Assembly (NCBI RefSeq): GCF_006345805.1
Contig: NC_042999.1
Span: 155,434,001 to 155,498,000 of the forward strand
DNA: 64,000 nt
Origin: Octopus sinensis
Lineage: Eukaryota
Reading direction: 5' to 3'
Below, piece by piece: positions 12,253 to 55,765 of this stretch. The notes beneath the pieces were generated by a model. It was given only the letters and a program-made list of their open reading frames with translations, did no database searches and was not told the origin of the DNA. Each line of letters begins with the position of its first letter. Positions within the stretch are counted from its first letter, which is position 1. A program made the position numbers and the translations under genes.

Positions 12253-12344
12253 CAGTGATGCTTTACTATAGCGTTGTATATTATCGTCTGCTATTTCCCT
12301 TAAAAATTGGTGCATTGTTGTACCACTATCCTATATATACTCTT

Positions 12345-12750
12345 TTACTCTTTTACTTGTTTCAGTCATTTGACTGCGGCCATGCTGGAGCACCGCCTTT
12401 AGTCAAGCAAATCAACTCCGGGACTTATTCTTTGTAAGCCCAGTACTTATTCTATTAGTCTCTTTTGCTGAACCGCTAAGTGACGGCGACGTAAACACAC
12501 CAGCATCGGTTGTCAAGCAATCCTAAGGGGACAAACACAGACACACAAACATACACACACACACACATATATATATATATACATATATACAACAGGCTTC
12601 TTTCAGTTTCTGTCTGCCAAATCCACTCACAAGGCTTTGGTTGGCCTGCGGCTATAGTAGAAGACACTTGCCCAAGGTGCCACGCAGTGGGACTGAACCC
12701 AGAACCATGTGGTTGGTAAGCAAGCTACTTACCACACAGCCACTCCTGTG
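12345..12750 (-). mobile_element. tRNA-derived SINE family S1 (~420 bp, internal TA/CA microsatellite)
   Basis: Head gcaggagtggctgtgtggtaag...gggttcagtcccactg. Other copies at ~13085-13455, 17855-18255, 21663-22045, 23330-23780, 32000-32220, 38450-38900, 39080-39590, 41350-41790, 48425-48820, 57360-57700 and 61930-62205. Confidence 0.85.
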
Positions 12751-13573
12751 CCTATTTATATATATATATATCATCTATCTATCTATTTATGGTGTATTCT
12801 GTGAAGAACATAGTATAATACAGTATAAAGCTCATTCACCTTCAGATTTACCCTGTGCTATCCAGTGGTAGTATTATACATACTTCCTGGTTTGCATTTG
12901 GGCATCTGTTGTGTGTGAACAGATAAATGAAAAAATTGGAGTCAAGAAGAATAGGTGAGGCATTTATTTTTTAATCACTACAATTGTTTCCATGCAACGT
13001 AGTTCTTCAGGAGTGCATGTACTTGATTATGCAACCGTTTCCTTGTATTATGAGATCTAGTTGTGTTTCCTCAGGCGATATACTCTTTTACTTCTTTCAG
13101 TCATTTGACTGCAGCCATGCTGGAGCAGCGCCTTTAGTCAAGCAAATCGATCCCAGGACTTATTCTTTGTATTCCTAGTACTTATTCTATTGGTCTCTTT
13201 TGCTGAACCGCTAAGTTACGGGGATGTAAACACACCAGCATCAGTTGTCAAGCGATGTTGGGGGGACAAACACACACACACATATACATATATATATGAC
13301 GGGCTTCTTTCAGTTTCTGTCTACCAAATCCACTCACAAGGCTTTGGCCTGCCGAGGCTATATAGTAGAAGATACTTGCCCAAGGTGCCACACAGTGGGA
13401 CTGAACCCAGAACCATGTGGTTGGTAAGCAAGCTACTTACCACACAGCCACTCATACACCTATATGTAAATATTCCCTTCGTAAGTTTAAAATCCTCGGG
13501 TTTGAGAACATCATCTCTGTCTGTTGTACCCCTTCTCGTTGACTCCAGTTTTCTCACTTAGATATGTTTATTC

Positions 13574-17600: not shown

Positions 17601-18807
17601 CCCACACACACACATATACACACACATACACACATTTATATAAATAATAGTTACTATATATATATACAGTAGCATGTAAAAAGCACCCACTACACTCCTG
17701 AAGCGGTTGATGTTAGGAAGGGCAATCCAGCTGTAGAAGCCTTGCCAGATCAGATTGGAGCCTGGTGCAGCCTTCTGGCTTGCCAGTCCTCAGTCAAACT
17801 GTCCAACTCATGCCAGCATGAAAAGCAGACGTTAAATGATGATGATGATGATATCAGGAGTGGCTGTGTGGTAAGTAGCTTGCTAACCAGCCACATGGTT
17901 CCGGGTTCAGTCCCACTGCGTGGCATCTTGGGCAAGTGTCTTCTGCTATAGCCCCGGGCTGACCAATGCCTTGTGAGTGGATTTGGTAGACGGAAACTGA
18001 AAGAAGCCTGTCATATATATGTATATATATATATATGTATATGTTTGTGTGTCTGTGTTTGTCCCCCTAGCATTGCTTGACAACCGATGCTGGTGTGTTT
18101 ACGTCCCCGTCACTTAGCGGTTCGGCAAAAGAGACCAATGGAATAAGTACTGGGCTTACAAAGAATAAGTCCCGGGGTCGATTTGCTCGACTGAGGGCGG
18201 TGCTCCAGCATGGCCGCAGTCAAGTGACTGAAACAGGTAAAAGAGTAAAAAGAGTATATATATATATATATATATACATACACTCGTGCATGTATATGAT
18301 CATAAAATTTTCAATAAATTAACTACAAGAGCATTAATTAGAAAGGGATTCTTGATGGAAAGTAGAATAAAAAAAATATTTTTACTGCATAACCTTGTCC
18401 ACCAAACGAAGCAAACTGATTTGCATTCTCGAAATAATTAATTAGTGATACCAAGACAATTATTAAAACATTCCAGGGATTCTTTATTCGAGTTTACTCG
18501 GATTAAATTTTGCTCACACTTGCACAACACTGTGGCTTATTCACCTACAGATAATGTGTAATAACTCACACACATACTTTTATACTAAGGAGTCATGCCA
18601 GTTCATTACATGAATGCAAGTTTATCCACACATACACACATACATGTTCACATTCATATACATAAATGCACACACTAACCAGATCAGGTATCCGCAAACC
18701 CCCAAGAGCTGTCTTCACTTTAAACAAAAGACCTTCCTTCTCACTTTGTTAGTCACCAGCTTTTCAATTCTGAAAAAAAAAATCTGAAATAAATCTCAAA
18801 TACACGC

Positions 18808-21173: not shown

Positions 21174-24100
21174 AGTGGGGAAGTTGTTGCAAATCTAGAC
21201 ACCTGACCCAAATGTTTGCAACAGGGTGGACTCTATTAAGGGTACCCAAGGGTCATTTGGGGGTGGGTGAGCAGTTAAAGAAGGTGGTGAAATGTTAAGA
21301 CTGTCCCTGAAAAATGACTTGGCATGCATTAAGCTGGGCTGTGGTTGTTGTCCTGTTTTGAGATAGCAGTGGATGTGGTTTATGGTGATGCTGAGAAAAG
21401 TGATGTAGTTGTCATCATCGTCATCATCATCATCGTCCTTATCATTGTCATTGTTATCTGTATCATTGTCATCGCTGTCCTTATTGTCATCATCAATAAT
21501 GGTTGCGGTGATGATAAAACAGGCTGAAAAAACCCTCCAAAAAACCCCCAATAACACTACGAGATGGCAGAGTTGTTAACACACAGGAAGAAAGGTTCAT
21601 AGCATTTCGTCTGTTTCTACATTCTGAGTTCAAACTCCACCAAGGTCGTCCAAGCCTTCTATAGGTGCAGGAGTGGCTCTGTGGTAAGTAGCTTGCTTAC
21701 CAACCACATGGTTCCGGGTTCAGTCCCACTGCGTGACACCTTGGGCATATATCTTCTACTATAGCCTCGGGCCAACCAAAGCCTTGTGAGTGGATTTGGT
21801 AGACGGAAACTGAAAGAAGCCCGTCGTATATATATATATATATGCATATGTTTGTGTGTCTGTGTTTGTCCACCCAACATAGCTTCACAACCGATGCTGG
21901 TGTGTTTACGTCCCTGTCATTTAGCGCTTCAGCAAGAGAGACTAATAGAATAAGTACTAGGCTTACAAAGAATAAATTCTGGGGTTGATTTGCTCGACTA
22001 AAGGCGGTGCTCCAGCATGGCCACAGTCAAATGACTGAAACAAAGAAAAGAAAAAAAAATATTTTGTATGCTGCCAAATGGAATCGAACCCATTTTCTTC
22101 ACCTTTAGAACAACCAGCCACCTGCCACCTGACCAAACTTTTCAGCCTGTGTGCTTTAATTAATTATACACAGGTTTAGGAAGAAGGTGTTGCTGACAAG
22201 TGTCAACCAGTGGCATTATTAAAACAGCTGGGTGTTTGTGTAGTAACAGAGGTCAATGGGAGGAGGGGAAGAGGAGGAGGGGAGGAAGAAGAGGAGGGGA
22301 GGAAGGAGAGGAGGAGGAATAGTAGTTTTATAGAAGACCTTCACTCCCCTTTCTTTCCAGCCACTTTCTCCTCTTGTTAATCTATCTGATTGAGAGATAA
22401 GGGTGAGAAGAGGTAGTGTAGTTGTGATGGTGGTGGTGGTGATCGTAGTGATGATGTGAGGCGTGTAGTCTGGTGCTTTTATTCATGTAGACAGATAGAA
22501 CTGTGAGTAAACAAGTTACAGAGTTCAGGTGTAATATGTGTGTGTATATAAACCTGTATTGTGTGTGTTCAGTTTATACAGGTGAGAGTATTTATGAATG
22601 TGTACCAATATATCTACAGGTGGAAATATGTATGTGTATCATCATCATCATCATCATTGTTTAACGTCCGCTTTCCATGCTAGCATGGGTTGGACGGTTC
22701 AACGGTTCGACTGGGGTCTGGGAAGCCAGGAGGCTGCACCAGGCCCAAAATGGTCTGGCAGTGTTTCTACAGCTGGATGCCCTTCCTAATGCCAATCACT
22801 CCGTGAGTGTAGTGGGTGCTTTTTACATACCACCAGCACAGGTGCCAGGCGAGGCTGGCAACGGCCACGATTGGTTGGTGCTTTTTACATGCCACCGGCA
22901 CAGAAGCTAGTCGGGGCGGCGCTGGCAACAGTCACATTCGGATGGTTCTTTTACATGCTACCGGCACTGGTATCACAACTACAATTTCTATTGATTTTTG
23001 AGCGATTTCGATTTCGATTTCACTTGCCTCAACAGATGTGTATAGACACACACAGGCATACACATATCCCCATTACTTAATGTCCATTTTTTTCCTTTCT
23101 TGTACATGCTGGACAGAAATTGTCCAGGCTGCTTTTCTATGGCTGGATGCTCTTCCTGTCACCAACCCCCACCTCTTTCCGAACAAGTAATAAATAAATC
23201 TCCATGGAAGACAAGAACAACCTCACTTGTATGTTGGTGATGCTCATTTACAATTATCACATGGTGTCAAAACAAGGGTACATACAGACGCCCACATACA
23301 TACACACGTGTTATAAACATCAAGCTTCTTTTAGTGTACCAAATACTCACAAGGCGTTTGTTGGCGTAGGACTATAGTAAAAAGCACTTGCCCAAGGTAC
23401 CACGCTGTGGGACTGAACCTGAAACCACATTCTTTCTTTTTTTCTTTTACTTGTTTCAGTCATTGGACTGTGGCCATGCTGGAACACTGCCTTTAGTTGA
23501 ACAAATTGACCCCAGGACTTATTCTTTGTAAGCCTAGTGCTTATTCTATTGGTCTCTTTTGCCAAACCGCTAAGTTATGGTGGGGTGATAAACACATACA
23601 CAAATACATACATGCACACACACACACATATATATGACAGGCTTCTTTCAGTTTCCATCTACCAAATCTACTCACAAGGCATTGGTCAGCCCAAGGCTAT
23701 AGTAGAAGACATGCAGTGGGACTAAACCCAAAACCCTGTGGTTGGGAAGCAAGTTTCTTACCACATAGCCACTCCTGCACCTATATACATACATATTCCG
23801 ATGCCAGTGCCACCTGACTGGCTCCCGTGCCAGTGGCATGTAAAAAGCACCATTTGAGTGTGGCCAATACCAGTGCTGCCTGACTAGCTCCCATTCTAGT
23901 TGCATGTAAAAAGCACCCACTACACTCTCAGAGTGGTTGGCATTAGGAAGGGCAATCCAGCTGTAGAAATCTTGCTAGATCAGATTGGAGCCTGATGCAG
24001 CCTCCTGGCTTGCCAGTCCTCAGTCAAACCGTCCAACCCATGGCAGCATGGAAAACGGAAAGCGGACGTTAAACAACGATGATGATGATGATGATGATAG

Positions 24101-25499: not shown

Positions 25500-25858
25500 T
25501 GTCAAATGTAAACATAACAGGTTGGATATTGTTATTTGGGATAGAGGGGCAAAGGTATGTACTATCATAGGGGTCAGCTGCCCTGCAGATATAAATATCT
25601 CTTTGAAAATCAAAGAAAAAGAGGATATCTATGGACAGCTGCTTCAAAACCTCCAGCTTCTATATCCAGACTATGAACTCATATTCATATCAATAATAAT
25701 TGGAGCACTAGGTTTTGTTAGTAAGTGCTTAAAGGAGAATTTGGATAAACTGGGATTTTAAGAAAGAGAAATTAACCGGTTGGTTTGTACATTACAAGTG
25801 TAATCTGTGAGGGGAACAGTAAAAATATGCAAGACTTTTCTCAAGTTCCAAATGTGAA
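25500..25858 (+). mobile_element. Non-LTR retrotransposon 3' fragment, restriction-like endonuclease (REL) domain
   Basis: DIVIWDRGAKVCTIIGVSCPAD...KEKEDIY...IIIGALGFV; contains in-frame stops. Confidence 0.75.
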
Positions 25859-26471
25859 TTTGTCTGTGTTAACTACATCCCAAAGATGGAGACTTGTATC
25901 TTTGTTGGAAACCAGCTCCCTCCTCAGTGGAAAATTTATAATAATTAGAAAATAGAAGAGACATACATACATGTAAACATGTGTGTATGTGTGTGTGTGC
26001 GTGTGTGTGTGTGTTTGTGTGTGTTGTTTGTCCACTCTTGTCTTGACATCGCATAATAGTTGTAACTGAGTATCAGTGTCATACAAGTAGTGTCTTTCAT
26101 TTCCAATATTTGCTTAATATGTGTTGAGGCAAGGGGAAATATTACCATACTTGGAAACAGGTACGAATTGGCAACAGGATAGCATGCATCTGACCACAGA
26201 AAATCTGCTACAGTAAAATCTGTTTAATCCATACAAGCATGGAAAAATAGACCTTAAAATGATGAAGATGATACTGAAAATTGGTATGTGTGTGTAAATA
26301 TATTTATAAAGTTTTGTATAGAAAGAAATTACTCTTTCTAGGAATGTCTTACATCCAAGTGTCCACTGGTTTATTTCTATATCGATTAATTTATAAATAC
26401 TTTCATGTATTCGATATGACAACAGAATTTTAGTAATATAATATAAAGAAAATGGAGAGTTTAAACATAGG

Positions 26472-26754: not shown

Positions 26755-27237
26755 TCTGTGTTTGAACTCTTTATTTTCCTTATATTATATATTATTTTGC
26801 TGAGGCATGGTGATTACCAATAACCTGATGTTAGAACTCATATACATATGCTTCAGAACAAAGTGTCTAAAGCTCCAGTGAAGCTATAGAGTGATACTCA
26901 AGCACTCAACTATGAGTGCATTGCATTTTGTAGCAGAAACAGCTGTAAGCCAATGAAGTTCATGACATAATTCCTTCTTTCCTTGTCATTTATTTAATTT
27001 CTTATATATATGTGTGTGTATAATTTTGAACTAATCTGTTGTGTGTTTAATGCTATTCATTTTTGGATGTACATCTACTGTTTTCAACAATACCAATAAA
27101 CCTGTAAATGTATAGTCACTATATTTCCAACTAGCATGTTCTGAATTTATAACACTTCTTTAGGTTTTTAATTTATAAAATTTAATCAAAATATTGTTAT
27201 TCTAATTAATGTTATTTTTTTTTCATTTTCTCCTTAG

Positions 27238-29246
27238 GAATCAATGGAAGACCAAGTCTTGAGAACAATGCAAATTTTGACAAATCTTTCCAGAAATTTT
27301 TAAAGCAATTCCAATATCGAGGTGCATCTGTTGCTTTGATGCGCCAAGGGAAACTCTTATACTCCCATGGTTATGGCAGTACACAGAATAATGTTAAAAT
27401 GACACCAGAAGTCTTGTTTCCAGCTTCAAATATTTCTAAATTACTCACTGCTGTATCCGTTCTTAAACTTGTTGAAAATGGTAAAGTGAACCTTACTGCT
27501 AAAGTCTTTGGTAAGTTTGGAATTTTGAATCACTTACGACCTTGGAGCATTTTTCGAACTGACAACAGGCTGTATGACATTATAGTCGATGACCTTCTTC
27601 GGCATGCTGGTGGCTGGGATTCAGCTATGCCACCAATGTTTGATCCAGTTCTGAATTCTATTTACTTAAAAAATGGTTATCGCATTCCAAACATCACTTC
27701 CATCATGCAGTTAAAGAACACTGCTGAAATGAAGGATATTTTCAGATACATGATGTCGATTCCACTGAATTTTAAACCAGGAACGAAATCAGTTCATTCT
27801 CATCTTGGTTATGTTATTCTGGACCAAATTATTGAGAAAGTTCAAAATTACGATTATCCAACATTTGTAAGGAAAAATATTTTAGAGCCTTGTGGAATGT
27901 GGCATACAAGATTCGGAAAACATATGAAAGAAAACAGGATAAAGAATATGGTTAAACGTAGCTTGGTCGGAAACTTTAATACAACTTATTCTCTACACCT
28001 AGAGAGGGAGGTGGTCTCTCTCACTGATGGCTGGTATACCAATGTTTATGATATTATGCGCTTTTTTCGATGCTTGGATCATACTGGTACACATCGATTA
28101 CTTAAAAAATCTTCCATCAAAAGTCTCTTGGCAAAACCAAGAAAAATGAAAGCTTCAGGCTCATGGGTTGGTGCTAACCTAAATGTGAACAAACATGGTC
28201 GAGTTTGTCTGGAAGGAGATGGCATAATTGATGGTATGCTGTTGTGCCACCGGAACTTCTTACAAACGGTTCAGAATCCAGGTAATTCCTCATATATGTC
28301 TTCAGAGACATTTGTTATGCTATTAGTTGGTGGTCACAATAAACCATTACCAGTTCAAAACTTCATGAATTATTTCAAAGATTGGTCGCAAAATGGTGCT
28401 AATTACTTCTCTTATGATTTGGCCGATATTCGGGTAGGGCATGTAGGAGTTAACGAACAAATTATTAAATACAAGTTGTCTGAACACCATATTTCAGCAT
28501 ATGTCAATGCTATTAAAGACCAACACTTCAAAATTGAATGGATAAATGCTTTTGAGTATAATAGAGAATCTTATTTTTCTGTTATCTCTAAAATAAACCC
28601 AGATGAAAGTCTTAGTTCTTTCTATCTGGAGCATGGGCTTGACGAGAAGGGTTTGCTCCACTTCAAACATCTTTATTCCAAGGAAAATGTATATCTGTCT
28701 TTATTACAGAGCTATATCAGTTTCGCACACACAGACAAAAACAGATATATGGCACTATTTGATACGGTGAAAGAGGAACCTGTTGATATTCGATTTGGAA
28801 TTCGACAATATTCCCAATGTTACAAATTGTTTGCTCAAGTTTATAATGAGAAGGGTTATGTCCCAAGAGTCCAAAGTTTTGTCCACATTGATCAAGAACC
28901 ACAAGTGTGTTTCATTTTGGAAAAGAAACCTGTAAAAGAGTACAAAGAATACATAGATATTTCCCTGAAGGAACTGACTGAGAGCGTTGTCTCAAATGCT
29001 AAGGCACACCGTGTTATGACATACTTGGACACTTCCAGCAAGTATAAAAGACCAAGATTTTCAGTCATTTTCAGGAAAGACCCTTCCAGACAAGGCACAT
29101 TCAAAAACAATGTCGAGATATCACAGCTTGAAGATATCATTGCCGATGGGTACTTGAAGGACAGTTTTTTCCCAAAACTAATTGCTGGATATTCAGATAA
29201 GAAAGGCACATTATATTTTGCCATTTATATGGAAAGAATCTTATAA
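27238..29246 (+). CDS. Terminal coding exon of a beta-lactamase-family (serine hydrolase/PBP fold) protein with five C-terminal BTRD1-like repeats; catalytic motifs degenerate; N-terminus on unidentified upstream exon(s)
   Basis: The 636-aa ORF (27336-29246) stays open upstream to a splice acceptor (ttttttttcattttctccttag|GA, AG at 27236-27237, phase 1), adding INGRPSLENNANFDKSFQKFLKQFQYRGASVAL. Family motifs: GASVALMRQGKLLYSHGYG, FPASNISK, LLRHAGGWD, PLNFKPGT, HSHLGY, ILEPCGM. Repeat-like C-terminus from 28455. Stop TAA at 29244-29246. No repeats interrupt it. Confidence 0.9.
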
Positions 29247-29779
29247 ATTCCTCCTTTGTTTGTCTTTTATATTTAATATACACACCATACAGATTGATCA
29301 TACATCACCAAATATATGCTATAACAAAATTTTATGTAAATGACATCTCAAAGACAAAGAAAAATTGTTCCTATCCAACTGGAATTTATTCTGTATTATT
29401 TAAAAAAAAAATCAAAATACTTTTCTCACAAGTACCAGTTAAAACGATTTTGCAAATACTTGTCTTTTAATGAATGCTTCTACAAAATTGATGACAGAAT
29501 GTAAGAATTTATGATTTTTGTACATACCAATTTCTTACAAAAGCAGCAAAGCTTCCACATGTAGATGGAGGTGAAATGAGATTTTACTGTATTCATGCCT
29601 TTCTCAAGAGAAGGTGAAAGGGCTTGAAGTCATGGGAGTTAGGTTTCCAAGAATTTTGGTTTATTCTATAAATAGAATCCTTTATTTGAGTAATTAGTGT
29701 AAATATATGAATAGAATAATTCTTGTGTATATTCATTGTAATAATTAAGATTATTATAATGGTAATAACCATAATAATC

Positions 29780-29940
29780 ACATTGTTGATCTGCATCTTT
29801 GGATTCTTGTAGAATACATGGTAACACTTTTCTGCGGGTCAACAAAGTGTCTCCGTTTTGAATAACCTTCAGACTTTTAGGTAGAATTTTGGGTGTTGTG
29901 CTAAATGCACCAATTACCACAGGGACAATTGTCACCTTTT
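29780..29940 (-). mobile_element. REL LINE 3' fragment
   Basis: TIVPVVIGAFSTTPKILPKSLK. Confidence 0.6.
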
Positions 29941-30049: not shown

Positions 30050-30600
30050 TTAGGTATCACAAGTTTTCAGCAGTCTTTCAAATGTTTCGAAACCTCCTGA
30101 TAATCCTTACTGTCTTGAAGAGACAAACTTTCTGTAGGAGCTCTACAGGGTATTGTAGCCCAATCTCCTCCAGCCATTTGTCTATATCTTTGCTTACTGT
30201 TCCCAAGGCACCAATTATTATAGGTACGACCTTGACAGTTCCCATGTTCCAAATTCCTCCTATTTCCAATTTTAAGGAATTGTATTTAAAAAAATTTTTC
30301 TTCCTCATTCTTTACAATCCTGGAATCAAACAGGCATGATGGGTCAATAAGTAAGTAACTTTGCTTTTCCTTATCTATAATTGTTATTTCTGGTCTATTA
30401 TTTTCTAACTTCTTGTCTGTTTGAATAGGAAAATCCCACAAAATCTTACATTTCTCTGACTCCAGTACTCTTTCGACTCGGTGATTGTACCATGTGTTTC
30501 CAGTTTCAAATCTCCATTTCTGACACAGTTTCCAGTGTAAATCTTTTACAACCTGGTCATTCATCAATTTTTTATATTCTTCCTGCACCAACTTATTATT
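30050..30600 (-). mobile_element. R4/Dong-like REL LINE 3' fragment with (TAA)n tail
   Basis: LHWKLCQK...WYNHRVERVLESEKCKILWDFPIQTDKKLENNRPEI and VKVVPIIIGALGTVSKDI...LLQKVCL; frameshifted. A sister fragment lies at ~44290-44520 (+). Confidence 0.85.
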
Positions 30601-31045
30601 ATCATTATTATTAAAGCAGCCAACTGCTAGAATTGTTTGGACACTGGCTAAAATGCTTGTCTGCATTTCGTCAGTCTTCACGTTCTGAGTTCAAATTCTG
30701 CTGAGGTTGACTTTGCCGTTCATCCTTTCGGGGTCAATAAAATAAGTACCAGTTGAGCACTGGGGTCGATATAAATGACTTACCCTCTCCACCAAACTTT
30801 CTGGCACTGTGCCAAAATTTGAAATCATTATTATTATTATTCTATGTTTGACTTTTTCTTTACATTTGCACAAGCTGGCTCCAAGTCTCACCCAGAGACC
30901 TCAAGAGACAATTTGGAAGTTTATGTTGGTATTATGCCTAGGGTGCCATATATTTGGTCTTGTACTTAGTGTTGTATGTCTAAAAAACCATACGAAAATT
31001 ATGTTTGTTTTAAAACTTGAGATTACGTAGAAAGTATTTTGCGTA

Positions 31046-37089: not shown

Positions 37090-39214
37090 TTATCAACATC
37101 TTCATCATCCTTTAACATCTGTTTTCCATGCTGGTATGGGTTGGATGGTTTGACCAATGCTGGCAAGCTGGGAAACTGCACCAGGTTCCAGTCTGATTTA
37201 GTTTGGTTTCTATGGCTGGATGCTCTTCCTAATTCCAACTACTTTACAGTGTGTGCCGAGTGTATTTAACATGCCACCAGCCTGAGCACTTTTATGTGGC
37301 ACCAGTACAGGACTTTTACAGACCAATCCTCTTCATTGGGAGATGTGGTCTTAACACTTTTACTGTGGAGGATGGGTCTTCTTGAGTACGGCAAGGTGCC
37401 AGGTATCTCGGTCCTTTGTCGTCTCATCTGAAAGGTTATATATGTAACAAGCTTCTTTCAGTTTTTGTATACCAAATTTAATCCCAAGGCTTTGGTAGGC
37501 CCAACCTTATTGAAGAAGATACTTGTCCAAGGTGCCACACATAGGGACTGAACTCAAAATATGTGGTTGAGAAGTAAAAATTTTAACCATACTTCCACGT
37601 CTGTTTAGGTAGCCATTCTTAACCAATAAAATTCTTCAGTGTGTGGTTTGAAATGCAATGTGTTGCCTAACATTTTGGAAATGTTATAAGAAAAGCAGCC
37701 AAAATTTGGCTCCAATGTCTTGTTTCGTCTTGGAATTTTCATTAATTACTTATTAATTTAGAAGCAGGTATAGTAGTATGGTTAAATCATTTGTTTTTGG
37801 TAAGTGTCTTTTATTATATCCCCAGGCCAAACAATGCTTTGTGAGTGAAATTCTTGGATGGAAACTGTGAAAATACCATTGTACATACACACACACACTT
37901 GCACACATACACACATGACATTGCATGATAGTTATAGATGTTTGTCATTGTCATACAAACGGTGTTAGACATTTCCAATGTTGTGCTGTCTTTAACATGT
38001 CTGACTATGGTAAAATATTACATATTACAGATGAGAGCTGGTAACAAGGAGGGCATACAGCTGTAGAAAATCTGCTTCAACAAACTCCATCTGATTCATG
38101 CTTGCACGAAAAATGATGGTGATATGTGTGTGTATTTATATATTATCATCATCATCATCATCATTTAATGTCCATTTTCCATGTTCGCATGGGTTAGACA
38201 ATTTGACTGGAACTGGTAAGTGAAGGAGCTGCACCAGATTCCAGTCTGATTTGGCATGGCTTCTATGGCTGGATGCCTTTCCTTATGCCAACCACTCCAA
38301 GAGTGTAATAGGTGCTGTTTACATGACACTGGCAAATATACCACAACAGACAATAGGAGTCTGGCCAGCTCCTGTCAAACCATCTAAGGTCCAACTGCTG
38401 ACATCTACCATGCCATATTACTGTAAAAATATACAAAAAAATATACAATAGGTGCAGGAGTGGCTATGTGGTAAGTAGCTATAGGTGCAGGAGTAGCTGT
38501 GTGGTAAGTAGCTTGCTTACTAACTACATGGTTCCAGGTTCAGTCCCACTGCATGGCACCTTGGGCAAGTGTCTTCTACTATAGCCTCGGGCTGACCAAA
38601 GCCTTGTGAGTAGATTTGGTAAACGGAAACTGAAAGAAGCCCATTATGTATATGTATATATATGTATGTGTGTGTATATGTTTGTGTGTCTGTGTTTGTA
38701 CCCCCTAACATCACTTGATAACCGATGCTGGTGTGTTTATGTCCCCCATAACTTTGCAGTTCAGCAAAAGAGACTGATAGATTAAATACTAGGCTTACAA
38801 AGAATAAGTCCTGGGGTCAGTTTGCTCAACTAAAGGCGGTGCTCTGGCATGGCCACAGTCAAATGACTGAAACAAGTAAAAGAGTAAAAGAGTAAAAGAA
38901 CCACCTCACCAAAATCTCCAGGCTACAACATAATGCATGACTAACTCAGAATAGTATAAACAAATAAGCATTACATCAGAATTCTAAAGGGTTAAATATT
39001 ATTAGGAATTGTATAAAAACATATCTTGTATATTGCAGAAGGATGACCAATTTATTGCACAAAACCTTATGTACTTTCTTTTTTAAAGCCTGGTATTTAT
39101 TCTCTCAGTCTCTTTTGTTGGACTGCTAAGTTATGGGAGACATAAATACACCAACATTGGTGAAGGACAAGCCGTGGTGAGGGACAAACACAGACACACA
39201 CACACGATGGGCTT

Positions 39215-47423: not shown

Positions 47424-49770
47424 CATCATCATCATTTAACATCCCTGTTCCATGCTGGCGTGGTTGGACTGGGGGCTCATACAGAAACATATATATACAT
47501 ACATGCATATATGTGTGTGTGTGTCTGTGTGTGTGTGTATATAAAGACAAAATGAAAATGGAGATAATTATGTATAATAGTATGTCCTGCAAAGAACATC
47601 ACTTTGAAATCCATTTTCGCCATTGCAAAAGATTCTAAGATTCTTTTGTTTTCCTAAACATTTCCTCTTTAACCAATTCCTTATTTGGCAACAAATTAGC
47701 ATAATACAGCAGAACATTTCTGGCTCATTACAAATCAATTTCTTTAACGAGAGAAAAGAATGACAATTATGTTTACATATATGTATAACTAATGACATAC
47801 ACAGTTAGCAAAATGGTTGGTTATAGCTTTTACACGTGTAGGATCTAATAGACATTTTGTACTATTAACACAGTATGTGGCTTAGAATATACCAAGACAC
47901 AGTTTTTGGCACAGCAGGTATAGTATTAGTTTCGAATTTTGGCACAAGGCCAGCAATTTATGGTGGGGGTGTTAGTTTGGCTACATCCACGCTGTTGGGA
48001 GGTAGGTTTGGAGAGGGCTCAGGCCAAAATTACACATCCTTCCCCTCCATTGGTCAGTTGAAGCTTAGATAGTGTCACATGACAGTTAGCTGGTGCTGGC
48101 TGCTGGAGCCTACCAGCGAGTATTTAAAGGGATATTTGGTGAGATGGTCATTTGCCCACTGACATTCGTTGACATTGCATCGAAGAAACCAACAAACAAA
48201 AGGCCAAAGGACAAAAGAGAAAGGAAAAATGCACTCAACACTAGAGCTGAAGACACTTTCGAAAGGCAGGGAGGTGCCACGTCAAAAATGGTAGAGGAGT
48301 AGGGGCCAAAACCAGACATGGTTCCTCTTGATGATGTCTTTAGCCACTGGATCCTATAAAGGAGCTGTTGAGGTAGCGAACCATGAAATGTGGTTGGAAT
48401 TCATTCCCTTACTCTACTTTTTTCTTTACTCTTTTACTTGTTTCAGTCACTTGCCAGCAGCCATGCTGGAGCACCACCTTTAGTTGAACAAATCAACCCC
48501 AGGACTTATTCTTTGTAAGCCTAGTACTTATCTTGTCAGGCTCTTTTGCCAAACCGCTAAGTTACAGGGACATAGATACACCAACATCGGTTATCAAGTG
48601 ATGGTAGGGGGGACAAACACACACATACACACACTCACACACATATATACATATATATGATGGGCTTCTTTCAGTTTTCATCTACCAAATCCACTCACAA
48701 GGCTTTGGTTGGCCTGAGGCTATAGCGGAAGAGACTTGCCCAAGGTGCCATGCAGTGGGACTGAACCTGGAACCATGTGGTTGGTAAGTAAGTAGCTTGC
48801 TACTTACCACACAGCCACTCCTGACTAGTACTTATTTTATTGACCCCAGAAAGATGAAAAACACAGTCAAACTCAGTGGAATTTGAACTCAGAACACAAA
48901 ACTGGACGAAATAAGGGTTAAACATTTTGCCAGGTACGCTAGCATTTCTGCCAGCTTGCCACCCTCAGCAGGTATATTATTAAGTGTGAAATTTGATAGG
49001 TGGTGGTAAACCAAATAGTTATGTGAACTGGAAGCCATCATCATCATCATCATCATCAGCATTTGATGTTCATTTTCCATGCTGGTATGGGTTGAATGCT
49101 TTGATAGGAGCAACCTAGCTGGAGAACTGCACCAGGATTCACTTCTCTGTTTTGATTTTATTTCTTTTCATAAAACAGAAAATGTGATTTAAAGGAGATT
49201 TGGCTGTTATTTCTAGCAAGTTGAGCGGCTGCTTTAAAAACTGCCCCTACAACAGCCTCATTAACTAAGACAATTATGATGATGTTCATATCCTGTAATT
49301 GAAACATATGGCATCGATTTAATAAAGAGCAGTGTTCATGTTTACCTCATTTATAATAAGTTGCACACGCAGTTTCAATACCCAGAGCAAGCATATTGCA
49401 TCGGGTTACAAAACAAAACGTCAACATGAATACTCTCACACATATGCATGTGCACACACATACATACACCCACTAACACCCAGCCACATACAAACACAAA
49501 CATATACATATATGCACACGTAAAAGCACACACACACATACATGTATATGTGTGTATATATATATATATTATATATATATATATATATTATATATATATA
49601 TATGTAAATGTATATATTTATATTTGTATATATAAATATGTATATGTGCTTGTGTATGTGTGTCTATATATATACTTATGTATTTATGTATATATATGCT
49701 TAAACGATGATGATATATGTATGTATATATATATATATTTAACTATATATATATGTATGTGTGTATATAT

Positions 49771-52349: not shown

Positions 52350-53245
52350 CCCGCCCCCCCCCCCCACCCCCAGCACCAATACCGATGAACCCGCCCCCCC
52401 ACCCCCAGCACCATACCGATGAACCCGCCCCCCCCCACCCCCACCACCAATACCGATGAACCCGCCCCCCCACCCCCAGCACCATACCGATGAACCCGCC
52501 CCCCCACCCCCAGCACCAATACCGATGAACCCGCCCCCCCACCCCCAGCACCAATACCGATGAACCCGCCCCCCCACCCCCAGCACCAATACCGATGAAC
52601 CCGCCCCCCCCACCCCCAGCACCAATACCGATGAACCCGCCCCCCACCCCCAGCACCAATCCGATGAACCCGCCCCCCACCCCCAGCACCAATACCGATG
52701 AACCCGCCCCTCCACCCCCAGCACCAATACGATGAACCCGCCCCCCACCCCCAGCACCAATACCGATGAACCCGCCCCCCCCACCCCCAGCACCATACCG
52801 ATGAACCGCCCCCCACCCCCGCACCAATACCGATGAACCCGCCCCCCACCCCCAGCACCAATACGATGAACCCCCCCACCCCCAGCACCAATACCGATGA
52901 ACCCGCCCCCCCCACCCCCACCACCAATACCGATGAACCCGCCCCCCCCCACCCCCACCACCAATACCGATGAACCCGCCCCCCCACCCCCACCACCAAT
53001 ACCGATGAACCCGCCCCCCACCCCCACCACCAATACCGATGAACCCGCCCCCCCACCCCCAGCACCAATACCGATGAACCCGCCCCCCACCCCCACCACC
53101 AATACGATGAACCGGCCCCCACCCCCACCACCAATACCGATGAACACTGTTCTCACCCCCCACCACCAATACCGGTGAACTCTGTTCTCACCACCACCAC
53201 CACCAATACCGGTGAACACTGTTCTCACCCCCACCACCAATACCA
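52350..53245. repeat. C-rich/G-rich ~34-bp minisatellite (copy 1), about 23 core units
   Basis: Unit agcaccaataccgatgaacccg(c)n-a-ccccc; the last units diverge (gtgaacactgttctc). Confidence 0.95.
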
Positions 53246-54879: not shown

Positions 54880-55765
54880 GGTGCCCCGCCCCCCCCCCCC
54901 ACCCCCAGCACCAATACCGATGAACCCGCCCCCCCACCCCCAGCACCAATACCGATGAACCCGCCCCCCCGCCCCCCACCACCCCCAGCACCAATACCGA
55001 TGAACCCGCCCCCCCACCCCCAGCACCAATACCGATGAACCGCCCCCCCCCACCCCCAGCACAATACCGATGAACCCGCCCCCCACCCCCAGCACCAATA
55101 CCGATGAACCCGCCCCCCCCACCCCCAGCACCAATACCGATGAACCCGCCCCCCACCCCCAGCACCAATACCGATGAACCCGCCCCCCACCCCCAGCACC
55201 AATACCGATGAACCCGCCCCTCCACCCCCAGCACCAATACCGATGAACCCGCCCCCCCCCCACCCCCAGCACCAATACCGATGAACCCGCCCCCCCCCCC
55301 CCCAGCACCAATACGATGAACCCGCCCCCCACCCCCAGCACCAATACCGATGAACCCGCCCCCCACCCCCAGCACCAATACCGATGAACCCCCCCACCCC
55401 CAGCACCAATACCGATGAACCCGCCCCCCCCCACCCCCACCACCAATACCGATGAACCCGCCCCCCCACCCCCACCACCAATACCGATGAACCCGCCCCC
55501 CCCCACCCCCACCACCAATACCGATGAACCCGCCCCCCACCCCCACCACACCAATACCGATGAACCCGCCCCCCCACCCCCAGCACCAATACCGATGAAC
55601 CCGCCCCCCACCCCCACCACCAATACCGATGAACCGGCCCCCACCCCCACCACCAATACCGATGAACACTGTTCTCACCCCCCACCACCAATACCGGTGA
55701 ACTCTGTTCTCACCACCACCACCACCAATACCGGTGAACACTGTTCTCACCCCCCACCAATACCA
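54880..55765. repeat. Same ~34-bp minisatellite (copy 2)
   Basis: Same unit and a similar order of variants as copy 1. Confidence 0.95.

What the first reader, a model, noticed from the sequence alone, without database searches (positions are those of the whole stretch)
27417..27803. Beta-lactamase-fold protein with substituted active site (SxxK to NxxK, YxN to HxH): candidate pseudoenzyme or binding protein
Seen: aligned to the family pattern F-x-x-x-S-x-x-K, the sequence reads F-P-A-S-N-I-S-K, placing Asn (AAT, 27429-27431, one base from Ser AGT) at the nucleophile position. The YSN motif after PGT reads HSH (CAT/CAT, 27795-27803; each one base from TAT and AAT). No HxG/KTG motif is recognisable. 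The ORF is nevertheless intact for ~670 codons with structural motifs conserved (LLRHAGGWD, PLNFKPGT, GYVIL), in a region where all transposon ORFs have decayed. Established: SxxK and YxN are the catalytic motifs of class C beta-lactamases, DD-peptidases and PBPs. Inference: a selected non-catalytic role, such as binding D-Ala-D-Ala peptidoglycan stems or another ligand (immune or symbiont sensing). Alternatively, Ser31 shifted by one position, or a His-based site, could provide new chemistry.
Basis: partly seen in the sequence, partly recalled or inferred. Interest (0 to 1): 0.82.

Follow-up and report, generated by a model that had tools for sequence, protein, structure and literature searches.

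The report
Catalytically dead beta-lactamase-fold octopus protein
This is the main exon of an uncharacterised Octopus sinensis gene for a secreted protein with a penicillin-binding-protein/beta-lactamase fold; it has lost the catalytic serine and tyrosine yet has been kept by selection since before octopuses and cuttlefish split, next to a sister gene that still has them.

Summary
Window 27238-29246 (+) is the last coding exon of Octopus sinensis LOC115209921 and encodes the whole mature protein (669 aa). It matches Pfam Beta-lactamase (E 1e-31). Ungapped alignments to solved relatives put Asn65 (27429-31) on the nucleophile Ser, and His187/His189 (27795-27803) on the Tyr and Asn of YxN.

One claim is wrong: the third motif is recognisable as His338-Arg-Asn, and that His is invariant in 22 animal relatives.

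The C-terminal 270 residues form five EHEE repeats. Their only solved counterpart is the fungal polyglycine hydrolase Fvan-cmp (7TPU), where the domain order is reversed.

The gene is not decaying: dN/dS is 0.09-0.25, the same as its tandem paralogue, which keeps Ser/Lys/Tyr/Asn/His. Cuttlefish orthologues with the same Asn and His occur as spliced, polyadenylated mRNAs.

Across this uncharacterised bilaterian family, loss of the Ser goes with loss of the Tyr in at least five clades. That argues against a shifted nucleophile. No Asn-to-Ser recoding appears in 33 assembled transcripts.

Best reading: a selected, non-acylating pseudoenzyme that probably binds a ligand. The ligand is unknown. A His- or metal-based new chemistry is not excluded.

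The parts
27236..27237 (+). Splice acceptor AG of the phase-1 intron that follows the signal-peptide exon (that exon is outside the window)
   Evidence: The sequence reads ..ttttctccttAG|GAATCAAT. The O. vulgaris and O. bimaculoides loci show exon 1 ending TCAG|GTAAGA and the same acceptor. A cuttlefish-clade genomic locus, L010, has the intron at the same position.
27238..29246 (+). Terminal coding exon of Octopus sinensis LOC115209921 (XP_029634384.1 residues 21-689), encoding the whole mature secreted protein; stop TAA at 29244-29246
   Evidence: 100% identical over 669 aa to P0184 (O. sinensis), 99.85% to O. vulgaris and 95.5% to O. bimaculoides; translation
27276..28148 (+). Pfam PF00144 Beta-lactamase match (residues 14-304); the modelled fold continues to about residue 395 (28421)
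   Evidence: E 1.1e-31. AlphaFold2 model: pLDDT 82, pTM 0.87. Best Foldseek hits are 2QMI, 4GDN, 9SN1 (Lip3), family VIII esterase 4IVI, EstG, LACTB, ClbP and AmpC.
27426..27440 (+). Motif 1, S64-N65-I66-S67-K68: Asn at the nucleophile position, Lys retained; N65-I-S is also an N-glycosylation sequon
   Evidence: Asn65 is conserved in all octopod and decapod orthologues.
27795..27803 (+). Motif 2, H187-S188-H189 in place of Y-S-N
   Evidence: His187 is conserved in octopods and decapods; position 189 is His in octopods and Ser in decapods.
28248..28256 (+). Motif 3 equivalent, H338-R339-N340 (family consensus H-[KR]-G), on the predicted beta strand 333-339
28422..29243 (+). C-terminal domain of five E-H-E-E structural repeats (polyglycine-hydrolase-type repeat barrel, Pfam PF17660 family)
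   Evidence: Domain model: pLDDT 89.7, pTM 0.89, five EHEE units. The only significant PDB fold match is 7TPU_A, E 1.3e-5. PF17660 hits 13 of 22 family members, but not the window protein itself at E<=1.

Best explanation
The region is the single large exon that encodes the mature form of a secreted two-domain octopus protein. The N-terminal domain has the class C beta-lactamase / penicillin-binding-protein fold. The C-terminal domain is a five-repeat barrel of the kind so far solved only in fungal polyglycine hydrolases. The gene is the catalytically disabled member of an old tandem pair in cephalopods. The neighbouring paralogue keeps Ser-x-x-Lys, Tyr-Ser-Asn and His-Lys-Gly. This copy has Asn for the nucleophile Ser and His for the general-base Tyr (plus His for Asn in octopods). 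Shown: the substitutions; their conservation from octopus to cuttlefish; purifying selection equal to that on the intact paralogue in both domains; and expression of the cuttlefish orthologue as spliced poly(A) mRNA. Inferred: it can no longer form the acyl-serine intermediate, so it works non-catalytically. It probably uses the retained pocket (Lys68, His338, Ser64/Ser67 and the new His residues) and the repeat barrel to bind a peptide-like ligand or partner protein outside the cell. This would parallel the non-catalytic receptor members of the PGRP and GNBP families (analogy from general knowledge). The ligand is unknown.
For: - Fold and motif positions.
- Identity as O. sinensis LOC115209921.
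- Hydrophobic signal-peptide exon and conserved phase-1 intron.
- Purifying selection: dN/dS 0.245 (dS 0.08) to O. bimaculoides, 0.09 (dS 1.2) to Argonauta and 0.07-0.11 among three decapod orthologues, similar in both domains. The intact paralogue gives 0.213 for the same species distance.
- Similar protein divergence in the dead and intact lineages: 53/60% versus 56/60% identity for the two domains.
- The tandem, same-strand paralogue with the full motif set lies 46-60 kb downstream in O. bimaculoides and O. vulgaris.
- Both types are expressed in runs with adjacent SRR accession numbers, so probably one decapod species: SRR24189490/97 and SRR24189493.
- The Sepia esculenta orthologue (run SRR19578111; PMC10141105) is a spliced, polyadenylated transcript listed in 76 blocks of the assembly collection.
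- Family-wide co-loss of Ser and Tyr: 28/7/1/27, Fisher p 5e-10, in at least five separate clades. Lys68 is retained in 56/63, Asn189 in 52/63 and His338 in 46/63.
Against: - No biochemical data exist for any animal member.
- Ser64, directly before Asn65, is conserved and could in principle act as the nucleophile.
- Three His residues (187, 189, 338) are expected to line the former active site in octopods, which would also fit a gain of new chemistry rather than pure loss.
- Retention of Lys68 and His338 is equally compatible with residual catalysis.
- Octopus expression rests only on gene models; no spliced octopus transcript was seen here.
- The Ser/Tyr association test is not phylogenetically corrected.
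Confidence: 0.62

Rival explanations
1. The protein is still an enzyme with a rebuilt active site. Either Ser64 serves as a shifted nucleophile with His187 as the base, or His187/His189/His338 (with Asn65) bind a metal or form a His-based hydrolytic site inside the old pocket.
For: Ser64, Lys68, His187 and His338 are conserved across octopods and decapods. H-x-H plus a third His is a common metal-ligand pattern (general knowledge). Other dead clades combine Asp/Glu at position 65 with His at 187 and 338. Constraint around the motifs is as strong as in the intact paralogue: 63% versus 66% identity.
Against: His189 is Ser in decapods, so the three-His set is specific to octopods. One decapod orthologue (Sepia) has also lost Lys68 (SNISN). 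Ser64 is simply the ancestral state shared with active members. Many dead relatives have Val/Ile/Phe at 187 and no Ser at 64 or 65. Tyr to His is a single transition, so its recurrence is unremarkable. The geometry could not be measured.
Confidence: 0.15
2. The beta-lactamase-fold pocket is irrelevant or blocked, for example by a glycan on Asn65, which sits in the N-I-S sequon created by the substitution. On this view the function lies in the C-terminal repeat barrel or in the protein as a scaffold or carrier.
For: The N65-I-S67 sequon is present in all orthologues. The protein carries a signal peptide and four further sequons. The C-terminal domain is slightly better conserved than the N-terminal one: dN 0.28 versus 0.38, and 60% versus 53% identity.
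Against: The sequon follows automatically from Ser-to-Asn in an S-I-S-K context, so it need not be used. N-x-S sites at a buried helix start are often unoccupied (general knowledge). The beta-lactamase domain is itself under strong constraint, with dN/dS about 0.1.
Confidence: 0.15
3. A-to-I RNA editing recodes AAT to AGT, restoring the Ser nucleophile in some tissues, so the genome encodes a conditionally active enzyme.
For: The codon is AAT or AAC in all orthologues, both editable to Ser codons. Cephalopods recode extensively (general knowledge).
Against: All 33 transcript-derived decapod sequences read Asn. There is no unusual local RNA structure and A27430 is unpaired (z +0.52). Editing cannot turn CAT into a Tyr codon, so the general base would still be missing.
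Confidence: 0.04
4. It is a decaying duplicate (an unprocessed pseudogene) whose open frame survives by chance.
For: Catalytic residues are lost and the surrounding DNA is repeat-rich.
Against: The frame is 669 codons long. dN/dS is 0.09-0.25 across species pairs with dS up to about 1.3. The intron position and signal peptide are conserved. Decapod orthologues are expressed as spliced mRNA.
Confidence: 0.02

Closest known systems
Fungal polyglycine hydrolases / chitinase-modifying proteins (Fvan-cmp, PDB 7TPU; Bz-cmp, Es-cmp)
   Same: Secreted two-domain proteins that combine a class C beta-lactamase-like domain with a barrel of five EHEE structural repeats (PMC9912923). 7TPU is the third-best sequence hit in the PDB. 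It is the only significant fold match for the C-terminal domain.
   Different: The domain order is reversed: here the beta-lactamase fold comes first. The host is an animal, not a fungus. The Ser nucleophile and the Tyr (Tyr447 in Fvan-cmp) are replaced by Asn and His. Sequence identity is only 12-20%. Polyglycine cleavage is therefore not expected for this copy.
PBP-related / S12-type serine hydrolases: Pab87 from Pyrococcus abyssi (2QMI), Flp and FmtA of Staphylococcus aureus (4GDN, 5ZH8), Lip3 DL-peptidase (9SN1), family VIII esterases such as EstG, and class C beta-lactamase AmpC
   Same: The same fold and the same positions for the three motifs.
   Different: All of these keep Ser-x-x-Lys and a Tyr/Ser in motif 2, and all are bacterial or archaeal. 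None has the C-terminal repeat barrel in this arrangement, so far as seen here.
LACTB family (metazoan mitochondrial PBP homologues; PMC2266909)
   Same: Animal proteins of the PBP/beta-lactamase superfamily, with weak sequence similarity (E about 5e-8).
   Different: LACTB proteins are defined by intact SXXK, [SY]X[NT] and [KH][ST]G motifs and are mitochondrial. This protein fails all three motif definitions in full, has a secretory signal peptide, and carries an extra repeat domain.
Non-catalytic immune receptors derived from enzymes (non-amidase PGRPs; GNBP/beta-GRP glucanase-like proteins)
   Same: By analogy only (general knowledge): secreted invertebrate proteins in which a duplicated microbial-polymer hydrolase lost catalytic residues and was kept as a binding protein beside active paralogues.
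   Different: Different folds, and no evidence here for microbial ligands or immune expression.

Membership tests
PBP / serine beta-lactamase superfamily (Pfam PF00144; SxxK acyl-serine transferases) | Homologous fold and sequence | tested here: met
   PF00144 E 1.1e-31 against a cut-off of 27 bits. Foldseek probability 1.00, with TM up to 0.76 normalised to the target.
PBP / serine beta-lactamase superfamily (Pfam PF00144; SxxK acyl-serine transferases) | Motif 1 SXXK with a nucleophilic Ser | tested here: not met
   Reads N65-I-S-K68. Asn aligns ungapped to the Ser of 2QMI, 4GDN and 7TPU; the Lys is retained.
PBP / serine beta-lactamase superfamily (Pfam PF00144; SxxK acyl-serine transferases) | Motif 2 [SY]X[NT] | tested here: not met
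   Reads H187-S-H189.
PBP / serine beta-lactamase superfamily (Pfam PF00144; SxxK acyl-serine transferases) | Motif 3 [KH][ST]G on strand beta3 | tested here: inconclusive
   H338-R-N lies on predicted strand 333-339. The His is conserved, but the second and third positions deviate; intact paralogues have H-K-G.
PBP / serine beta-lactamase superfamily (Pfam PF00144; SxxK acyl-serine transferases) | Covalent acylation by beta-lactams or substrate turnover | not testable with these tools
   Needs Bocillin-FL, nitrocefin or activity-based probe assays.
Polyglycine hydrolases (fungal cmp proteins) | Five-repeat EHEE barrel domain (PF17660) | tested here: met
   Five EHEE units are predicted at pLDDT 89.7. 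7TPU is the sole significant PDB fold hit, E 1.3e-5. PF17660 is found in 13/22 family members, best E 6.9e-11, but not in the window protein itself.
Polyglycine hydrolases (fungal cmp proteins) | Repeat domain N-terminal, beta-lactamase-like domain C-terminal | tested here: not met
   The order is reversed: the beta-lactamase fold covers residues 14 to about 395 and the repeats 396-669.
Polyglycine hydrolases (fungal cmp proteins) | Catalytic Ser and class C-type Tyr | tested here: not met
   Asn65 and His187. PMC9912923 describes the Ser nucleophile and Tyr447.
Polyglycine hydrolases (fungal cmp proteins) | [quoted passage not shown] | not testable with these tools
   A biochemical assay is required.
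LACTB family | All three PBP motifs intact, and mitochondrial localisation | tested here: not met
   The motifs fail. The N-terminus of the full protein is a hydrophobic secretory-type leader, MDPLRKLSFWIVTLLALGLS. The definition comes from PMC2266909.
Pseudoenzyme (enzyme homologue lacking catalytic residues, retained by selection) | Key catalytic residues missing while close paralogues keep them | tested here: met
   N65 and H187 here, against S and Y in tandem paralogue P0009/P0233.
Pseudoenzyme (enzyme homologue lacking catalytic residues, retained by selection) | Purifying selection and expression | tested here: met
   dN/dS 0.09-0.25. Spliced poly(A) transcripts of the decapod orthologues.
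Pseudoenzyme (enzyme homologue lacking catalytic residues, retained by selection) | Demonstrated absence of the ancestral activity | not testable with these tools
   Needs recombinant protein assays.

The most novel reading that the evidence does not exclude
The pocket of this serine-hydrolase fold has been rebuilt in octopods into a new His-rich site (Asn65, Lys68, His187, His189, His338) that binds a metal or performs non-serine chemistry. More broadly, bilaterian marine invertebrates may carry an unrecognised family of secreted polyglycine-hydrolase-like proteins in which active and dead tandem paralogues work as an effector/sensor pair against microbial or dietary peptides.
Probability: 0.12. 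Interest if true: 0.75.

Novelty: new variant of a known kind. Interest (0 to 1): 0.45.

Why it matters
The beta-lactamase/PBP fold is among the best-studied enzyme scaffolds, yet few selected, catalytically dead, secreted members are known in animals. This case has three useful properties. It comes as a clean natural pair (intact and dead tandem paralogues). The dead state is old, predating the octopus-cuttlefish split or arising twice. It also belongs to a wider, wholly uncharacterised bilaterian family seen in molluscs, a brachiopod, a nemertean, an echinoderm, a hemichordate and amphioxus, in which the nucleophile has been lost repeatedly. The work links an animal family to the five-repeat barrel so far solved only in fungal polyglycine hydrolases, a domain of unknown function. 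Functional study of the pair could reveal what that barrel does and what non-catalytic jobs the PBP pocket can take on. It remains a sequence-level lead without phenotype, tissue or ligand.

Tried and rejected
- Paralogue or signal-peptide exon inside the window: tblastn found only the one exon. Exon 1 lies 63-84 kb upstream in related octopus genomes.
- Pseudogene: rejected by dN/dS and conservation.
- Contaminant or bacterial DNA: rejected. The gene sits in chromosome-scale assemblies of three Octopus species with a conserved intron and collinear flanks.
- RNA editing: no Ser variants among cluster members and no local dsRNA signal.
- 'At least one Ser at position 64 or 65 is always kept': this held for the first 28 sequences but failed in the wider family, which includes LD, LE, LG and VD.
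- Resolving whether the Asn/His state arose once: the four cephalopod groups form a near-star tree. Informative sites split 6/6/4, and NJ bootstrap gives 45% for monophyly of the dead copies and 66% for the intact copies. This is left open.
- Species identity of the other decapod transcripts from run accessions: only SRR19578111 (Sepia esculenta) could be traced.
- Literature on the gene IDs or on PF17660 in animals: none found. A 'serine beta-lactamase-like' shell-matrix peptide hit (PMC7081993) was too weak to be relevant.
- Pfam scans of neighbouring short ORFs: no hits.
- Search for the SNF transporter gene, which is joined head-to-head to the Sepia transcript, in the octopus flanks: absent.
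Full report
**What is in the window**

Residue numbers below count from Gly1 at 27237; add 20 for XP_029634384.1 numbering.

The finding lies in a 669-codon open frame. It begins directly after a polypyrimidine tract and an AG (27236-27237) and ends at a TAA (29244-29246). An in-frame stop sits just upstream, so this is an exon, not a free-standing ORF.

The translated exon is 100% identical to residues 21-689 of Octopus sinensis XP_029634384.1 (LOC115209921, 'uncharacterized protein'). It is 99.85% identical to O. vulgaris CAI9720376 and 95.5% to O. bimaculoides LOC106876528. The window is therefore O. sinensis DNA.

The other coding exon is 61 nt long and encodes the hydrophobic leader MDPLRKLSFWIVTLLALGLS plus one base of Gly21. 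In O. bimaculoides and O. vulgaris it lies 63-84 kb upstream, behind a phase-1 intron (G|GTAAGA ... TTAG|GA). It is not in the window.

The whole mature protein is thus encoded by window 27238-29246. This is by far the longest ORF in the 64 kb.

**Checking the observation**

Pfam places residues 14-304 in PF00144 Beta-lactamase (E 1.1e-31). An AlphaFold2 model built on 22 relatives (pLDDT 82, pTM 0.87) matches PBP-like and class C structures with Foldseek probability 1.00. The hits include Pab87 (2QMI), Flp (4GDN), Lip3 (9SN1), family VIII esterases such as EstG, LACTB, ClbP and AmpC.

Pairwise phmmer alignments to 2QMI, 4GDN and 7TPU run ungapped through motifs 1 and 2:
- A-S-N-I-S-K aligns with G-S-I-T-K, A-S-N-T-K and A-S-V-S-K. 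Asn65 (AAT, 27429-27431) sits on the nucleophile Ser and Lys68 on the catalytic Lys.
- V-H-S-H-L-G-Y aligns with F-Y-L-N-T-G-Y, E-Y-S-N-M-N-Y and A-Y-S-N-Y-C-P. His187 and His189 (27795-27803) replace the Tyr and Asn.

The translations were re-read directly.

A third motif is recognisable as His338-Arg339-Asn340 (28248-28256), on a predicted beta strand (333-339). It occupies the alignment column where bacterial relatives have K-D-G and the intact paralogues have H-K-G. His338 is invariant in all 22 animal sequences first aligned.

**The second domain**

Residues 396-669 fold, at pLDDT 89.7, into five consecutive strand-helix-strand-strand units. The only significant PDB match is 7TPU, the polyglycine hydrolase Fvan-cmp of Fusarium vanettenii (E 1.3e-5; the next hit has E 0.17).

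The N-domain of 7TPU is described as five quasi-identical EHEE repeats forming a novel barrel of unknown function (PMC9912923). Pfam's model of that repeat (PF17660) hits 13 of the 22 family members, though not the octopus protein itself.

The protein is thus a polyglycine-hydrolase-like two-domain protein with the domain order reversed.

**Family and relatives**

Homologues with the same architecture occur in these groups:
- other cephalopods
- bivalves (Mactra, Crassostrea, Solemya, Tegillarca)
- abalone (Haliotis)
- the brachiopod Lingula
- the nemertean Lineus
- the sea urchin Diadema
- the hemichordate Glandiceps
- amphioxus

All are annotated only as uncharacterised or hypothetical. The library of papers holds nothing on the gene IDs or on this repeat in animals.

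The closest non-animal relatives are bacterial serine hydrolases. One, from the planctomycete Gimesia aquarii, has its beta-lactamase-like domain at the C-terminal end, the order seen in the fungal enzymes.

**The dead site is old and selected**

Asn65 and His187 are present in three Octopus species, a fourth octopus (Logan contigs), Argonauta hians and three decapodiform clusters. One decapodiform cluster is Sepia esculenta, traced through run SRR19578111 in PMC10141105.

Position 189 is His in octopods and Ser in decapods. The Sepia protein has additionally lost Lys68 (SNISN).

Nei-Gojobori dN/dS values:

| Comparison | dN/dS | dS |
|---|---|---|
| O. sinensis vs O. bimaculoides | 0.245 | 0.08 |
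| O. sinensis vs Argonauta | 0.09 | 1.2 |
| Among the decapod orthologues | 0.07-0.11 | about 1.0-1.3 |

The values are similar in the two domains.

The intact paralogue gives 0.213 over the same Octopus species distance. Protein divergence between octopod and decapod copies is about the same for the dead and intact lineages: 53/60% versus 56/60% identity for the two domains, and 63% versus 66% around the motifs.

The Sepia transcripts carry the signal-peptide exon spliced on, at the intron position seen in a related genomic contig. They end in poly(A), and the protein is listed in 76 blocks of the assembly collection.

This is a functional gene, not a relic.

**The intact neighbour**

In both O. 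vulgaris (OX597816.1) and O. bimaculoides (CM046603.1), a paralogue about 52% identical lies 46-60 kb downstream on the same strand. It has S-S-I-A-K, Y-S-N and H-K-G.

Its codons at the two key positions are AGC and TAC, against AAT and CAT here. Each is a single transition.

Decapods also have both types. Transcripts of each come from runs with adjacent accession numbers (SRR24189490/97 and SRR24189493), so probably from one species.

The four cephalopod groups form a near-star phylogeny. Informative sites split 6/6/4, and NJ bootstrap gives 45% for monophyly of the dead copies and 66% for the intact ones. A single duplication and inactivation shortly before the octopod-decapod split is the simplest reading. 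Parallel origin or gene conversion between the tandem copies is not excluded.

**Pseudoenzyme or new chemistry?**

Across 63 family members that cover the motifs, the nucleophile column holds Ser (35), Gly (10), Asn (6), Asp (5), Ala (3), Glu (2) and Gln (2). Loss of Ser goes with loss of the Tyr:

| | Tyr kept | Tyr lost |
|---|---|---|
| Ser kept | 28 | 7 |
| Ser lost | 1 | 27 |

Fisher p is 5e-10. The test is not corrected for phylogeny, but the losses fall in at least five separate clades of the tree.

Several dead clades have no Ser at 64 or 65 (L-D, L-E, L-G, V-D).

If the nucleophile had merely moved by one residue, the general base would be expected to stay. Its repeated co-loss argues that the acyl-enzyme mechanism has been abandoned.

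Lys68 (56/63), the Asn of motif 2 (52/63) and His338 (46/63) usually persist in the family. This fits a pocket that still binds something.

In octopods the pocket would hold His187, His189 and His338 together, a pattern reminiscent of metal sites. I could not measure the geometry, and His189 is not shared by decapods, so this remains an open minority reading.

The substitution also creates an N-I-S glycosylation sequon at the former nucleophile in a secreted protein. Whether it is occupied is unknown.

**RNA editing**

The codon is AAT or AAC in every orthologue, so it is editable to a Ser codon. However, all 33 transcript-derived decapod sequences read Asn. The 201-nt local fold is unremarkable (z +0.52) with A27430 unpaired. 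Editing also cannot restore the Tyr. Low-level or tissue-specific editing needs read-level data.

**Verdict**

The specific ligands proposed are unsupported.

The feature is a new variant of a known kind. It is a conserved, catalytically disabled, secreted member of the PBP/beta-lactamase superfamily with a polyglycine-hydrolase-type repeat barrel, paired in tandem with an intact paralogue, inside a broad and unstudied invertebrate family. Interest is moderate: it is a good, well-defined lead for biochemistry, but without ligand, tissue or phenotype.

Noticed in passing
window 52355-53217 and 54890-55739: Two arrays of a C-rich 35-bp minisatellite (about 25 copies each, 88-91% matches). They produce spurious ORFs of 270-315 aa in three frames on the minus strand.
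   Followed up: partly
window 12341-12761, 13081-13474, 17855-18264, 21661-22065, 38480-38894, 48415-48823: Copies of a dispersed repeat of about 400 bp. They are 83-90% identical to several places in the O. vulgaris and O. bimaculoides loci, in both orientations, and look like a SINE-type element.
   Followed up: no
window 25522-25761 (+), 29666-29935 (-), 30078-30308 (-), 30286-30681 (-): Short ORFs flanking the exon share a motif of the type (V/I)IGALG(T/F)VSK. They look like decayed fragments of one retroelement family, but none gave a Pfam hit.
   Followed up: partly
window about 25870-26090: An AC/TG dinucleotide microsatellite, seen as THTHTH-type translations in the ORF list.
   Followed up: no
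L012 / L011 (O. vulgaris OX597816.1, 166.85-167.05 Mb) and L001 / L013 (O. bimaculoides CM046603.1, 43.85-44.00 Mb): Tandem arrangement, conserved between species, of the dead gene and an intact-motif paralogue. O. vulgaris has three consecutively numbered models (CAI9720374-376), so a third copy or a fragment may exist.
   Followed up: partly
L003 523-2445 (-) and L004 315-2237 (-), Sepia esculenta transcript contigs: In two independent RNA-seq assemblies the orthologue's mRNA is joined head-to-head, about 555 nt between start codons, to a 640-aa SNF-family (sodium:neurotransmitter symporter) mRNA. This suggests overlapping first exons or a bidirectional promoter in cuttlefish. No SNF exon was found in the available octopus flanks.
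   Followed up: partly
P0003 and its cluster (Sepia esculenta orthologue), motif 1: The cuttlefish orthologue reads SNISN. It has lost the motif-1 Lys as well as the Ser, in all 15 cluster sequences examined (P0003 plus 14 members).
   Followed up: partly
gene structure: window 27238-29246; L010 2899-4914; P0069 (Gimesia aquarii): The entire mature protein is encoded by one exon in an intron-rich genome, and the only intron follows the signal peptide. The nearest non-animal relatives are bacterial. This would fit an ancient bacterial origin of the family, but it was not tested.
   Followed up: no
P0013-P0019, P0034 (bivalves); P0048-P0056, P0067 (taxa unknown): Other clades of the family have Gly, Ala, Asp or Glu at the nucleophile position, with Val/Ile/Phe/His at the Tyr position. 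Repeated inactivation is therefore a feature of the family, not an octopus peculiarity.
   Followed up: partly
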